Below are positions 3,001 through 7,594 of a stretch of DNA of 64,000 nucleotides, in pieces. The position numbers were made by a program, and so were the translations under genes. How positions within the stretch are numbered: the first letter of the stretch is position 1; each line of letters starts with the position of its first letter. The DNA is from Podarcis vaucheri (Eukaryota). The stretch lies in the NCBI GenBank assembly GCA_965113315.1, contig OZ220368.1. The stretch is one strand, 5' to 3'. Under the pieces are notes generated by a model. It worked only from the letters and a program-made list of their open reading frames with translations. It was not told the origin of the DNA and ran no database searches.

Positions 3001-4258
3001 TTATTTGAAGAGAAAGTGGGCACTCTGCTGAGGGTTCGGTCCTCCCAGTCAGAAGTAGGTTTCCTAGCTTCCCTGCCATTTATGAGGATTAGGCTCAGGA
3101 ATGCAAAACTGTGAACTTGGAAGTTAGGGCTCAAATTCCACCTCAGTTCTGAACTCAGTAGGTGGCCTTAAGCATGCCTCTGCCACAACTCTACCCACAT
3201 CTGTGAGTGGTAAGGGTGTTCACACGTTACGTTTAAAGAGTATACAAGCGGTGTACTCAATAGTTGAGCTGCACAAATCAGTGAGTGTACACTACGCTCT
3301 TTTATGCAAACAGTTGCACCTGTGTTCAGTGTAACGTGTGAAGAAGTCTAGAGTTGATTCCTCTCCCAACCACTCTCCTCACTGCTCTTGCAACTGTTTC
3401 TTCGCCAGTCCTTCTGGGCTCAAACCAACCACAGGGAGAGGGCCAGGCAAGCAGAGGGTGCTTCTCCATCCCCTTGCTTCTGTCACTGCCAGGGCTGCCA
3501 TACATCCAGGTTTTGAGATCCAAGAAAAGCCCCCAAATGTGTGTTTTTTGGGGGGAGATGTCCCCCCCCCAAAGCTCAAAAACTTTGAACAGCAACCCTA
3601 ACCGCTGCTCACTTCTTTGGAGAAGGTGGTTGCAGGCAGCAACAGTAACGAGGAGGAGCGAAGTTAGGGGGCTCTGGGAGTTGGCACTTGGTCCCCTGCC
3701 CAGCAGATGCCCATGGCTGGTCATACCATCAAACAGAGCAAGGTGGGCATCTTAGGCTGCTGATTTTGGGTTTTCTTATAAGGGCAGCAAATTGCTGCTA
3801 ATAATAATAGATAGTTGTTGTTGTGTTGGTTGTTATTAGCAACAGACACTGTTGCTTTACTGCCAGGGAGGTGGAGAGGAACTTGTGGGGTTGTGTGTTT
3901 CAGGTGCCAAAATAACGTGACCAGATTTGAGTCCTGTGTGCCTACTTTGAGTTTGTGTGCATGAAATTTTTTTGCTCTGCCACAGATAGCAAAATTTCTT
4001 GAGATGGCTCCGCAGATGTACAGTACTACTAACCCCTCACCCCAGCCCTGGCAGTACCTAGGACATTACTATTTCAAATTTCACATCAGTCGTGAGCTGA
4101 GCAGGTGGGCCTAAGCACATTCCTTTTCCTCAGTCCCATCTGTAACATAAGAAATCGTCATCGTCGTCATCTTATCAACTTATCTATGTATACAGATTAC
4201 TGAGAAATGCAGGTTTTGGTGTCTTCGGGTGTCTTCCCGTGTAAGAGTCGGGGTGTCT

Positions 4259-4303
4259 GTGCGACGTTTCGACGAGGTCTCACTCGTCATCTTCAGGCTG
4301 GTG
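4259..4303 (-). ncRNA. Mirror copy of the minimal hammerhead motif
   Basis: gacgtttc gacgag gtctca ctcgtc a tcttcag at 4263-4296 is the exact reverse complement of 4988-5021. Confidence 0.7.
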
Positions 4304-4980
4304 CTTTCGGCTTCTTGTTACTGGAACAGAGCAGAGTCTGGTGTTTGAGTTCCTATAAATACTGTTGAGGGGTGTGGTGTATAGCCTCCAACGTTCTGGG
4401 CAGAGAGGAAGTTCCTAGATTAGTGTGCCTTTTCTTCTTTTGTTCCTTAATTACTTGAGGGATATCTTGGGTGATTTCATGAGTGATATTCTGAATACCA
4501 CTGGGTGGGTCATTAAGTGTAGATTAGTTGCTAAAGCTTTCGTGTCTTGACCTCTTGAGCTTGTGAAGAGTTTTTCTGAGAAGATGGCTGTGCTGCATTT
4601 AGTTGTGCTCTGGCTTGGCTTCGTGTATAGGGGCGAGCTGTGGTTTTGTGCGAATATACACGAAGCCAAGCCAGAGCACAACTAAATGCAGCACAGCCAT
4701 CTTCTCAGAAAAACTCTTCACAAGCTCAAGAGGTCAAGACACGAAAGCTTTAGCAACTAATCTACACTTAATGACCCACCCAGTGGTATTCAGAATATCA
4801 CTCATGAAATCACCCAAGATATCCCTCAAGTAATTAAGGAACAAAAGAAGAAAAGGCACACTAATCTAGGAACTTCCTCTCTGCCCAGAACGTTGGAGGC
4901 TATACACCACACCCCTCAACAGTATTTATAGGAACTCAAACACCAGACTCTGCTCTGTTCCAGTAACAAGAAGCCGAAAG

Positions 4981-5025
4981 CACCAGCCTGAAGATGACGA
5001 GTGAGACCTCGTCGAAACGTCGCAC
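4981..5025 (+). ncRNA. Minimal type I hammerhead ribozyme motif (Penelope-type), sense to TGFBR3
   Basis: CTGAAGA (4988-4994) T GACGAG-tgagac-CTCGTC (stem II, 4996-5013) GAAA (5014-5017) CG TC; palindromic ACGT in place of stem III; predicted cut after GUC at 5021; stem I only ~2 bp. Confidence 0.7.
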
Positions 5026-5246
5026 AGACACCCCGACTCTTACACGGGAAGACACCCGAAGACACCAAAACCTGCATTCCTGTACCTGTGAAAATCTACG
5101 AAAGCAAATTACTGAGAAAATGTACACAAAGCACTTGAAATCTTAAAGAAGCACTATATAAATCCTAAATATTAATTATTTTTGGAATATTTATCAAATA
5201 ATGGCCACATTTTAATTGGTTGGTGTGTATTTGTGTTTTTTTACAG

Positions 5247-5384
5247 GTCACCTTACATTTGAATCCAATTTCTTCAATTCATATTCACCAGAGGCCATTG
5301 GCATTCATACTGAACTCTCCTGTTCCCTTGGTATGGAAGGTGAAAACAGAAAGACTTGCCCCAGAGATTTCGAGGTTTTTCACT
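5247..5384 (+). CDS. TGFBR3: TGFBR3/betaglycan coding exon (human exon 4 equivalent), orphan domain
   Basis: ttttttacag|GTC acceptor, ACT|gtaagt donor; 138 nt, phase 0/0; VTLHLNPISSIHIHQRPLAFILNSPVPLVWKVKTERLAPEISRFFT matches recalled vertebrate betaglycan VTLHLNPISSVHIH...KTERLA. Confidence 0.96.
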
Positions 5385-7594
5385 GTAAGTATTGGGAGCT
5401 TCATGAAGCTTTGTAGCCAGTTCATAATGGACCCTACTCAGTTAGCTGGTACTCCTTTCGAAGAAGGGGAAGGGAAAGTCATGCTGATAGAAAGAAATGT
5501 TAACTAGTTATCAGGTTTCAGAGCAAAGGCTCTTGGTGGCTTGTGGAAGCAATTTGAGTTCTCTCCAGTTATTTATTTGAACTTTTGTTTAAAATGAGGT
5601 TTATGGCATTGCCCTTAATGTGTGATCATCGACTCTAGTGGGCTTCCTATTCTGAGAGGCTGTGTGGCCTTGTGACAGATCATAAGCCCTGGAAGGCATG
5701 ATAGGAGCATTGCCAAAGGCAAGAGCAAGGAAGAAAATGTTAACTAACAAACAACTTGCTTTCTGTGTGGTCTGCAACCAAATCTCTAATCACTTTGAGA
5801 CGAGCCTCTTGGTGCACAGTGGAAAGTCTGTAATAATTATTTGAGGTTTTGTTAAAGGTACAAAAAACTAGGCCCAGGATGAAGTCATGTATGTGCTTCT
5901 CAAATACTGGCATGTTGCTCCTGGAGAAAGATCCAGCTATTACCTACTGTTTTGTAAATCACTCCTTCACAGTTTGCCAGGACATTCAAATTTGCTGTTT
6001 GTAAAGCTGAGCAGACTGGTTGTTTGGATTGCATTTTTAGGCTATGATATCATGTCTCATGGTGTGTCCTTAAAGCTTCACTATTTAACATCCTAATTTC
6101 GGAAACAAACATTACTGTTGCTGGTTGTAGAACAATTGCATGGGGTCCAGTCCTGCTTTATAAAGCACAGCCCACAACATTAAATAGGGCAAGTGATGTT
6201 CATCCTGAATTGGAATGAGAGAGTGAGTTTTCTCAAATTGCATCTGGAACCCAGTGGACAATCCAGAATGTAGTAATGAGAACAAATGTTATTAACACAT
6301 GTACTAAACTCATTGGAATGCAGTTTATAGTGTAGTATTACACTATTCCTGCTATGAGCATGTGGGACAGAAAACTCTGGTTCGGGGCAGCTAATCTGGA
6401 AGAAGAGTTGTGAAGTGGATATTGTCTTGTGAGCTGAGCCTGAGACCCAGTCCAAATATTGGAGGGGCAGGGGGAATCACATTGCTCAGTCCTCTTGGTG
6501 CTATGCTACAGGATTCAAAGATCACTTTAGTGCCCTGTGTATCTTGACCCTGAGATGGCCGTTTGATCCAGAAGTGAACTATTCTGTAAGTTTTTGTTTC
6601 TCGCATCTTTCCCTTTTCCCAATATTAAGTTTAGTTTACTACACACTTCTGTGTCAGTTTGCAAAATAATATGTGTGGCCAGTTCTTAAACACATTGAAA
6701 ATTTCTCCTTACTAGCCAGAGTGTTCAGAAATGTCTACCCTCAGGCTGGATTGTGCTGCCCTCACAGTTCCTCCAATGTCTAGGATGCAGAATTATTCAA
6801 GCTTACTCTGACCCTTGTACTGAATAATTTCTTGATTGATTGCCAGACTTTCCATGCCACTACATCCTGGAAAACATAGTATTTTGAATCCTTGCACGTT
6901 CCCGGTTTGTTTTTTTTAATTTTGAAAAAAAAGTCCATTGTTTATAAAGAGAAATATGTGTGTCTTACATGATGTACTAATGTCAGAATTATTGTGTCTG
7001 TCTCTATGGAAGAATTTAGCTGGATGATTCATAGACTTTCTGGCTTCTCTTGCTAATGTAAAAGGACATTGCTTTTTCATTCAAAAATGTGAAGAGGTTA
7101 TTTTCCATCAAAAACTCAATATTTTGAGTTGAAGCTTCTCCTAATAAAAAGATGATGAACTAAAAGGACCTATACTTTAAGGATTGAAAGAAAGGCATTC
7201 TGGAGCAACTAGCAGCCAAATTAAAAACTTTCAGTTAAGTTGCCACATAACAGTATGAGAGCTGTCTTAGTGGAAAGCCAGTCTCAGAGGCCATCTGGGT
7301 ACCTCTCAGGAACCTCTCAGCTAGCTTCTCCCGTATTTTGTCTCTAGCATCAAATAATCAGAGAAATCAGCTTTGAACATGGAAATTCCATTTTTGGTTA
7401 TTAATAGCAATTAAATGATACCGTGTTCAAAGCCCTTCACATGCATATGTAAAGTAGGCCAGTTTCTTTGTGGCCTGGTTTTCAATGAGATGGTCAAACC
7501 TGTTTCTGGATGAAATTGTTGCAAACTGCAGGTGGGGGTTCACATAACCATGTGATCATCTACATTAAAAAAACAAAAACCCTTCCACATAGAT

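What the first reader, a model, noticed from the sequence alone, without database searches (positions are those of the whole stretch)
4196..5119. Young Penelope-like insertion forming an apparently perfect 424-bp-arm palindrome next to a TGFBR3 splice acceptor
Seen: 4206-4629 is the reverse complement of 4655-5078 (paired coordinates sum to 9284; no mismatch found by eye). There is a 25-bp spacer, an unpaired 29-bp tail on one side only (5079-5107), and ATTACTGAGAAA on both flanks (4196-4207, 5108-5119). CpGs are intact. Established: Penelope-like elements often leave inverted pseudo-LTR arrangements with a short tail on one copy. Inference: the insertion is very recent and possibly polymorphic. 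TGFBR3 pre-mRNA would fold a ~424-bp dsRNA stem ending 168 nt before the acceptor at 5247, a candidate substrate for ADAR hyper-editing or Dicer, a possible splicing modifier, and a cruciform-prone site in DNA.
Basis: partly seen in the sequence, partly recalled or inferred. Interest (0 to 1): 0.8.

Follow-up and report, generated by a model that had tools for sequence, protein, structure and literature searches.

The report
Young polymorphic Penelope-like fold-back insertion
A 912-base insertion in a TGFBR3 intron is two head-to-head truncated copies of a very abundant Penelope-like retrotransposon; it is absent from another individual with the same species label and from two related species, which makes it real and very young but structurally ordinary for this element family.

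Summary
4206-4629 is the exact reverse complement of 4655-5078 (424/424). ATTACTGAGAAA flanks the insert on both sides, and a 29-nt tail sits on the right side only.

- A minimal hammerhead motif occurs once per arm and nowhere else in the window (0.02 expected by chance).
- The element's ATG lies inside the ribozyme core. The predicted cut is after ORF nt 28.
- The two 3' ends fall at ORF nt ~85 and 114. This matches the published green-anole element PAc: cut after nt 29, reverse-transcription starts at 111-118, and the tail lying between two start sites.
- Other genomic copies end at the same two points next to (AT)n.
- Other copies also run on past the 'spacer', so 22 of its 25 nt are element sequence.

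Contigs from another sample with the same species label, and from two related species, cross a precise empty site: 912 nt skipped, with a single 12-nt target copy. The insertion is therefore recent and polymorphic.

The predicted RNA stem is -907 kcal/mol, in silico only. Editing, small RNAs and splicing effects were not testable because no RNA run holds the locus. The palindrome centre was not checked with raw reads.

Earlier notes of this scan describe similar PLE insertions elsewhere in this genome. This is a known kind and of modest interest.

The parts
4196..4207 (.). Left copy of the target-site duplication ATTACTGAGAAA. The last 2 nt could instead belong to the element.
   Evidence: (D3). 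The empty-site joint 4195->5108 has 12 shared letters in X3, X4 and X12.
4208..4651 (-). Left element copy, 5'-truncated, minus orientation, 444 nt. Its 3' end is tail-less (about ORF nt 83-85) and abuts the left flank. 4630-4651 is the extra 22 nt that the right copy lacks.
   Evidence: perfect complement of 4655-5078. loose ends: other copies continue past 4651 and start at 4207 after (AT)n.
4263..4296 (-). Minimal hammerhead motif of the left copy, the mirror of 4988-5021. It is antisense to TGFBR3.
   Evidence: descriptor hit at 4296 on the minus strand.
4652..4654 (.). GAA, filler between the two 5'-truncation points. It matches neither copy's continuation.
   Evidence: compared with the family continuation loose ends (CTTGTGCC... 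/ CCTGTGCC...).
4655..5078 (+). Right element copy, 5'-truncated, plus orientation (sense with TGFBR3), 424 nt. It contains an open frame 4657-4830 with stop TAA 4831-4833 (possible C-terminal tail of the element ORF, unproven), a 160-nt UTR/pLTR, then the first 85 nt of the next ORF.
   Evidence: Layout compared with Poseidon_Ac. Pfam finds nothing on the frame.
4988..5021 (+). Minimal hammerhead motif: CTGAAGA, unpaired T, helix II GACGAG/CTCGTC with a 6-nt loop, GAAAC, GTC with the predicted cut after 5021. The element's ATG at 4994 is made of A9, the bulged U and the first G of helix II.
   Evidence: the only two hits in the window on both strands, 0.02 expected from 100 dinucleotide shuffles. 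The features match the min-HHR description in PMC4209133 and the PAc layout in PMC11167929. Rfam hammerhead models do not detect it.
5079..5107 (+). The 29-nt 'tail': continuation of the right copy to ORF nt 114, the distal reverse-transcription start.
   Evidence: some other copies end at 5106 and most at 5077, each followed by (AT)n. Tail defined in PMC8557442 and explained in PMC11167929.
5108..5119 (.). Right copy of the target-site duplication ATTACTGAGAAA.
5247..5384 (+). TGFBR3 exon (orphan-domain residues about 60-104). Its acceptor lies 168 nt after the palindrome.
   Evidence: E 1.6e-16 to solved TGFBR3 chains. Splice signals read.

Best explanation
One recent retrotransposition event of a Poseidon-type Penelope-like element (PLE) put two 5'-truncated copies of the element's end, head to head, into a TGFBR3 intron. 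Shown: the insert is 912 bp and bounded by a 10-12-bp target duplication. Both outer ends are element 3' ends, one at ORF nt ~85 (no tail) and one at ORF nt 114 (with the 29-nt tail). The inner ends are 5' truncations 22 nt apart, joined through 3 filler letters. The site is empty in another individual with the same species label and in two related species. Inferred mechanism, following the in vitro behaviour of the anole element PAc, which cuts and extends both DNA strands and starts reverse transcription at two adjacent internal RNA sites: the element's endonuclease nicked both strands about 12 bp apart; each 3'-OH primed cDNA synthesis on element RNA, one at the proximal and one at the distal start site; both cDNAs stopped after about 424-444 nt; they were then joined and filled in. 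Because both arms were copied from the same RNA population in one event, they are identical. Consequence, predicted only: TGFBR3 pre-mRNA from carriers contains a perfect 424-bp hairpin with the sense hammerhead locked against its antisense copy.
For: Palindrome, duplication, spacer and tail. PLE identity: the min-HHR descriptor hits only 4988(+) and 4296(-), with 0.02 expected. It has an unpaired nucleotide before a 6-bp helix II and no helix III, as described for metazoan PLE min-HHRs. The ATG lies in the core and the cut follows ORF nt 28, against nt 29 in PAc. The ends fall at ORF nt 85 and 114, against PAc RT starts at 111-118 with the tail lying between two start sites. An inverted 5'-truncated copy plus a 30-40-bp tail at one end is the textbook PLE arrangement. 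The Poseidon_Ac consensus ends ...CTGAGG|ATG...GAAACGTC, which is the same layout. Family behaviour: laid depth of 1e5-1e6 against about 90 in the flanks suggests roughly thousands of copies at 95% identity or more in organisms A, B and F. Other copies end at 5077 or 5106 next to (AT)n, and they continue past 4651. Youth and polymorphism: joint 4195->5108 skips 912 nt with 12 shared letters in X3 (organism A, other sample; one unbranched 4903-nt contig), X4 (organism B) and X12 (organism F), and in none of X1's contigs. This copy has the letter at 4592/4692 that is dominant in A's copies but absent from the laid copies of B and F. CpG observed/expected is 0.58 against 0.30. PAc cuts and extends both strands and is predicted to be a dimer. 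Fold: -907 kcal/mol with a continuous 424-bp stem.
Against: This copy has no reverse transcriptase or GIY-YIG domain, because it is truncated to its last 424-444 nt, and Pfam finds nothing. PLE membership therefore rests on RNA-level and structural hallmarks. Rfam's hammerhead models do not score the motif. Similarity to Poseidon_Ac was judged by eye from the supplement, not by a computed alignment. All runs laid were k-mer contigs, not raw reads. The centre junction (4651-4655) and the arm length lack independent read support, and X1 may be the very sample that was assembled. The target here is A/T-rich (9 of 12) but is not a microsatellite. The double-priming mechanism is inferred from one locus and an in vitro study of a related element.
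Confidence: 0.87

Rival explanations
1. Assembly artefact: a simple single-copy insertion, or a fold-back chimeric long read, was mis-assembled into a palindrome.
For: PLE tandem and inverted structures are known to trouble assemblies. No raw reads were laid. No listed contig piece bridges 4630-4655. X1 may be the assembled sample itself, so it may not be independent.
Against: The empty site in three other runs removes exactly 912 nt between two copies of a 12-nt target. Both outer junctions are element 3' ends, whereas a single copy would present a 5'-truncated end to one flank. The structure is asymmetric (tail on one side, 22 extra nt on the other, 3 filler nt), unlike a read fold-back, which mirrors unique flank. 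X1 holds 0.96 of the sampled words, and its contigs reach both junctions (4070-4205 plus 28 more letters; 5083-5240).
Confidence: 0.04
2. A non-autonomous DNA transposon of the foldback or MITE type whose long terminal inverted repeats are the arms.
For: Perfect long inverted repeats flanked by a target duplication look superficially like a foldback element.
Against: Other copies do not stop at the inner arm end but run on into more element sequence. Their outer ends are at two alternative points 29 nt apart. The arms carry a hammerhead motif with an embedded ATG, laid out as in PAc. From general knowledge, a 12-bp duplication is longer than is usual for DNA-transposon superfamilies. The laid depth tends to be higher towards the element's 3' end, though not monotonically, which fits 5' truncation of a retroelement.
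Confidence: 0.03
3. An old insertion that was lost elsewhere: the palindrome was ancestral and was precisely deleted in the other lineages by slippage between the 12-bp direct repeats, which hairpins are known to promote.
For: Long palindromes flanked by direct repeats are deletion-prone (general knowledge). Arm-to-arm conversion could keep the arms identical, so their identity is not a strict clock.
Against: It requires loss in organism B, organism F and another A individual. This copy carries the family variant private to organism A at 4592/4692, and it shows no letter that departs from the majority of A's copies at any arm position listed. CpGs are retained.
Confidence: 0.03
4. A LINE-type twin-priming inversion or a hammerhead 'retrozyme' repeat rather than a PLE end.
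For: Twin priming also gives inverted 5' parts. Retrozymes also carry hammerheads.
Against: There is no poly(A) or simple 3' repeat at either end. The two arms are the same segment rather than adjacent segments, as twin priming would give. The unit carries an ORF start and the PLE tail, and it is not a short tandem repeat.
Confidence: 0.02

Closest known systems
PAc / Poseidon_Ac, the Penelope-like element of Anolis carolinensis (Frangieh et al. 2024, PMC11167929; Arkhipova 2006 consensus in its File S1)
   Same: The hammerhead core sits directly before and around the ATG (CTGAGG|ATG in Poseidon_Ac, CTGAAG|ATG here). GAAACGTC is present, with the cut 25-26 nt after the start codon. The insert ends fall at two internal points about 30 nt apart, and the distal one is at ORF nt 114 (111-118 in PAc). 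Target preference is A/T-rich. Both DNA strands are usable as primers. ORF nt ~50-118 look alike by eye.
   Different: The helix II sequence and the predicted N-terminal peptide differ. The UTR before the ATG is about 160 nt here and 126 nt in Poseidon_Ac, and the two are not alignable by eye. The host is a different species. No full-length ORF is available in this window.
Generic PLE insertion architecture (Craig et al. 2021, PMC8557442; Arkhipova 2006)
   Same: There is an inverted 5'-truncated copy next to another copy, a tail of roughly 30-40 bp (29 nt here) at one end only, a bias to microsatellites, and a hammerhead in the pLTR.
   Different: Here both copies are short (424 and 444 nt), and no full-length or tandem unit lies between them, so the whole insert is a near-perfect hairpin.
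Rearranged Penelope copies with long inverted repeats in Drosophila (Evgen'ev et al., PMC3681739)
   Same: Inverted PLE repeats are proposed, and in transformed D. melanogaster observed, to give dsRNA that is processed into 21-22-nt siRNAs mapping to the inverted regions.
   Different: That is an insect host with an RNAi-based response. Here the hairpin lies in a vertebrate gene intron and no RNA data exist.
Inverted Alu pairs in primate introns (general knowledge, not tested here)
   Same: Intronic inverted retroelement pairs form long dsRNA that ADAR edits and that can influence splicing or back-splicing.
   Different: Alu pairs come from independent, diverged insertions hundreds of bases apart. 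This one is a single event with 100% arm identity and a 25-nt loop.
L1 twin priming (Ostertag and Kazazian 2001; general knowledge)
   Same: Both target strands prime cDNA synthesis in one event, giving an inversion with a target duplication.
   Different: L1's second primer anneals internally, so the two parts are adjacent segments. Here both primers start at the element's dedicated 3' start sites, so the same segment is copied twice.

Membership tests
Penelope-like elements (Penelope/Poseidon clade) | [quoted passage not shown] | tested here: inconclusive
   The copy is truncated to its last 424-444 nt. Pfam finds nothing on the three open pieces. No other copy lies in the window. Earlier notes of this scan report intact Poseidon-type copies elsewhere in this genome, which I did not check.
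Penelope-like elements (Penelope/Poseidon clade) | Minimal hammerhead ribozyme motif in the pLTR: conserved core, long helix II with an unpaired 5' nucleotide, no helix III | tested here: met
   The descriptor scan hits only 4988(+) and 4296(-), with 0.02 expected per shuffled window. The features are those described in PMC4209133. Helix I is weak (2 bp), and Rfam's canonical models miss the motif. Cleavage activity was not tested.
Penelope-like elements (Penelope/Poseidon clade) | ORF start codon embedded in the hammerhead, with the cut about 26 nt downstream (PAc layout) | tested here: met
   ATG at 4994 is A9-U-G of the motif. The cut after 5021 is ORF nt 28, against nt 29 in Poseidon_Ac.
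Penelope-like elements (Penelope/Poseidon clade) | [quoted passage not shown] | tested here: met
   A 29-nt tail lies on the right only. The ends are at ORF nt 85 and 114. Other copies end at 5077 or 5106.
Penelope-like elements (Penelope/Poseidon clade) | 5' truncation with an adjacent inverted or tandem partial copy (pLTR formation) | tested here: met
   Two head-to-head 5'-truncated copies. The arrangement is described.
Penelope-like elements (Penelope/Poseidon clade) | Insertion preference for A/T-rich DNA or microsatellites | tested here: met
   At family level, loose ends of other copies are (AT)n at both element ends in X1, X3 and X12. This target, ATTACTGAGAAA, is 9/12 A/T and begins with ATT, but it is not a microsatellite.
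Penelope-like elements (Penelope/Poseidon clade) | Sequence homology to a curated PLE | tested here: inconclusive
   Only a by-eye comparison with the Poseidon_Ac text was made: the core, GAAACGTC and ORF nt ~50-118 look alike.
Foldback / MITE DNA transposons | Arms are fixed terminal inverted repeats present in all copies | tested here: not met
   Contigs of other copies run past the inner arm end into further sequence, and they end at two alternative outer points.
LINE twin-priming inversion | Poly(A) or simple-repeat 3' end, with the inverted part being an adjacent, different segment | tested here: not met
   There is no A-run at either end, and the arms are the same segment.

The most novel reading that the evidence does not exclude
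The filled and empty alleles segregate in one species, which makes this a natural experiment. A perfect 424-bp intronic hairpin 168 nt before a TGFBR3 exon might be hyper-edited or diced in carriers, and might measurably change inclusion of exon 5247-5384 or TGFBR3 output. Separately, the locus would be an in vivo record of one PLE complex priming on both target strands while using each of its two reverse-transcription start sites once.
Probability: 0.12. Interest if true: 0.5.

Novelty: new member of a known kind. Interest (0 to 1): 0.3.

Why it matters
The element kind, its hammerhead, its tail and its inverted partial copies are all published, so the structure itself is not new. This locus adds a dated, clean example. 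It is a single event with both ends, both truncation points and the empty site in hand, and its two ends sit where the anole element starts reverse transcription in vitro. That is modest in vivo support for the 'both strands, two start sites' model of PLE integration. It also shows the family is active or very recently active in this species group. Because the allele is polymorphic, it offers a ready filled-versus-empty comparison for what a perfect long intronic hairpin does to a vertebrate gene.

Tried and rejected
- Rfam, permissive mode, on 3900-5400 and on 4950-5060: no hammerhead family was reported. The only hits were sub-threshold miRNA hits (mir-942, mir-3910, mir-8489) at the palindrome centre and a chance snR4 hit. 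I read the miRNA hits as artefacts of a perfect hairpin.
- Pfam on the open pieces 4657-4830(+), 4994-5107(+) and 4451-4651(-): nothing. An earlier try failed on a frame slip and was corrected.
- blastn of the element against the whole window: no other copy, so no in-window relative was available to align.
- Local fold of the 3' region 4975-5110: helix II forms, but the overall fold is no better than shuffles (z = -1.0). I make no claim for a conserved stem-loop at the RT start sites.
- A fourth earlier-notes search, on palindrome and empty-site words, was blank.
- Not run: a computed alignment with Poseidon_Ac, because the sequence exists only as supplement text and has no reference. It was left out rather than typed.
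- Not run: the large protein searches. The arm has no domain-bearing ORF, and the length window would exclude full-length PLE proteins.
- RNA evidence was not obtainable.

Full report
**The observation**

Reading the window and comparing the strands directly shows that 4206-4629 is the exact reverse complement of 4655-5078, 424 of 424 letters. The first mismatch outward is at 4205/5079. The repeat finder reports 427-nt arms at '100%', which includes that single mismatch.
- The 25-nt spacer is 4630-4654.
- The one-sided 29-nt tail is 5079-5107.
- Each arm keeps 12 CpG, observed/expected 0.58 against 0.30 for the window.
- No other copy of the arm lies in the 64-kb window.
- The neighbouring exon 5247-5384 is TGFBR3. 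Its translation matches residues 60-104 of solved TGFBR3 orphan-domain chains at E 1.6e-16. AG precedes it and GTAAGT follows it.

**What public reads say**

The locus was looked up in public runs, and Logan contigs of four runs were laid on 3600-5240. I stopped the stretch before the exon. All four runs are k-mer contigs, not raw reads.
- X1 is organism A and is probably the assembled sample. It holds 0.96 of the sampled words. Its contigs run from each flank to the element boundaries (4070-4205 plus 28 further letters; 5083-5240), and it has no empty-site contig.
- X3 (organism A, a different sample and study), X4 (organism B) and X12 (organism F) each have one contig that joins 4195 to 5108. 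The joint skips exactly 912 nt with 12 letters shared, which is the empty site with one ATTACTGAGAAA.
- Using the positions listed in table 3, the flanks of X3, X4 and X12 differ from the window by about 0.5%, 0.8% and 1.4%. These are one species and close relatives.

The insertion is therefore derived and polymorphic under the species label.

**The element family**

Within the insert, summed contig depth is 1e5-1e6 against about 90 in X1's flanks. The tool warns that this is not a copy number. As a rough guide it means thousands of copies at 95% identity or more in A, B and F. Laid depth tends to be higher towards the element's 3' end, though not monotonically, as 5' truncation predicts.

Loose ends of other copies are informative:
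- Copies run through 4630-4651 and then continue (CTTGTGCCAGCC...). So 22 of the 25 'spacer' letters are element sequence, and only GAA (4652-4654) is filler.
- Copies end at 5077, or less often at 5106, followed by (AT)n. On the mirrored side they begin at 4207 after (AT)n.
- At 4592 and its mirror 4692, all laid depth in organism A has the window's letter, while essentially all laid depth in B and F has the other letter. This copy therefore belongs to a variant private to A.

**Identity of the element**

A simple minimal-hammerhead descriptor was run over the window: CTGANGA, 0-1 unpaired nt, a helix II of at least 5 bp, then GAAA. It hits the window only twice, at 4988(+) and 4296(-), one hit per arm. 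100 dinucleotide shuffles give 0.02 hits.

The motif has the traits listed for metazoan PLE min-HHRs in Cervera and de la Pena 2014: a long helix II (6 bp) preceded by an unpaired nucleotide, no helix III, and a palindromic ACGU for dimer formation. Helix I is only 2 bp. Rfam's canonical hammerhead models do not report the motif. The only Rfam hits are sub-threshold miRNA models at the hairpin centre, which I regard as artefacts.

The element's ATG (4994) is built from A9, the bulged U and the first G of helix II. Relative to it:
- the predicted cut after 5021 is ORF nt 28;
- the tail-less end 5078 is ORF nt 85;
- the tail end 5107 is ORF nt 114.

Frangieh et al. [quoted passage not shown] They also report that reverse transcription starts at two adjacent internal sites, the distal one 111-118 nt into the ORF, and that the genomic tail is the sequence between the two sites. 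Finally, the protein cuts and extends both DNA strands and prefers A/T-rich targets.

The Poseidon_Ac consensus in that paper's File S1 ends ...CTGAGG and restarts ATG...GAAACGTC, with the cut after nt 29. By eye, its nt ~58-118 resemble ours at nt ~50-114.

Craig et al. 2021 describe the inverted 5'-truncated partner, the 30-40-bp tail at one end only, and the microsatellite bias as standard PLE features.

The one defining feature I could not test is the RT/GIY-YIG ORF. The copy is too truncated, and Pfam finds nothing. An open frame 4657-4830, extended by the left copy's extra 22 nt, with stop at 4831-4833, may be the ORF's unconserved C-terminal tail. It is followed by a 160-nt UTR, against 126 nt in Poseidon_Ac. 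This reading is unproven.

**Mechanism**

Shown: this is one insertion with a 10-12-bp duplication. The two outer ends are both element 3' ends and use the two alternative end points. The two inner 5' truncations lie 22 nt apart and are joined by 3 filler letters.

Inferred:
1. The element's endonuclease made staggered nicks on both strands.
2. Each 3'-OH primed cDNA synthesis on element RNA, one at the proximal and one at the distal start site.
3. Synthesis stopped after about 424-444 nt on both sides.
4. The two products were joined and completed.

This is like L1 twin priming, except that both primers use the element's own 3' start sites, so the same segment is copied twice. It explains the perfect arm identity without invoking conversion.

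**Age**

Arm identity alone is a weak clock. Zero differences in 424 paired sites gives only an upper bound of a few million years at about 1e-9 per site per year, which is my assumption, and palindrome arms can convert one another. The stronger evidence is the empty allele within the species label, the A-private family variant in this copy, and the retained CpGs.

**Consequences**

The TGFBR3-sense RNA of 4150-5250 folds with a continuous 424-bp stem at -907 kcal/mol. The stem ends 168 nt before the acceptor. The polypyrimidine tract and the likely branch region are untouched. The sense hammerhead in the right arm would be paired with its antisense copy.

In Drosophila, rearranged Penelope copies with long inverted repeats give siRNAs that map to the inverted regions, so dsRNA production by PLE fold-backs has precedent. 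Whether this hairpin is edited, diced or affects splicing could not be tested. No listed run that holds a substantial share of the locus is RNA, and the read tools were exhausted.

**Rivals**

- An assembly artefact is unlikely. The structure is asymmetric, it is bounded exactly by the duplication, and it is removed as one 912-nt unit in the empty alleles. However, the centre junction has no independent read support.
- A foldback or MITE DNA transposon is contradicted by other copies running past the inner arm end and by the two alternative outer ends.
- Ancient insertion with repeated precise loss is contradicted by the A-private variant and by parsimony.
- LINE twin priming and retrozymes fail on their defining features.

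**Relation to earlier notes of this scan** (unchecked AI notes)

The same stretch was also noted as a mirror-image hammerhead pair. Other notes on this genome call it a lizard and describe a very abundant Poseidon-type PLE, including fold-back and partial-tandem insertions elsewhere. So the scan has found this kind before on other DNA of this genome. I did not verify the host's identity. It is consistent with the resemblance to the anole element.

**Verdict**

This is a new, clean and polymorphic member of a known kind. Its functional effects are open.

Noticed in passing
window 4592 and 4692 (mirror positions in the two arms): All laid depth in organism A (X1, X3) has the window's letter here, while essentially all laid depth in organisms B (X4) and F (X12) has A/T instead. 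This is a species-private variant of the element family and could serve as a marker of lineage-specific amplification (table 3).
   Followed up: partly
window 3747, 4056, 4096 (left flank): X3, X4 and X12 all share the letter that differs from the window. The insertion-bearing haplotype is therefore derived at three sites within 596 nt.
   Followed up: no
window 4070-4100: X1's contigs break at 4099/4070 with a k-1 overlap, and the junction contig has depth 55 against 92 in the flank. The carrier may be heterozygous near 4100. Its zygosity for the insertion is not settled, because an empty-allele unitig in a heterozygote would be only about 48 nt long.
   Followed up: no
window 4922-4932 (+) and mirror about 4352-4362 (-): A TATA-like GTATTTATAGG lies about 65 nt before the element's ATG. 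Poseidon_Ac has an ATATATATT box about 50 nt before its ATG. If it is the pLTR promoter, the right copy would fire towards the TGFBR3 exon and the left copy away from it. The ORF from ATG 4994 stops at 5146, before the exon.
   Followed up: no
window 4591-4693: Rfam miRNA models (mir-942 at 60.9 bits, mir-3910 at 57 bits, both below their gathering scores of 95-100) match the palindrome centre on both strands. This reflects a perfect hairpin and is not evidence of a miRNA gene.
   Followed up: yes
window 5031-5107: The last 77 nt of the element are 68% A+C and contain GAAGACACC twice. This recalls the 'AC-rich stem loop' at the PAc RT start sites, but the local fold is no better than shuffles, z = -1.0.
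   Followed up: partly
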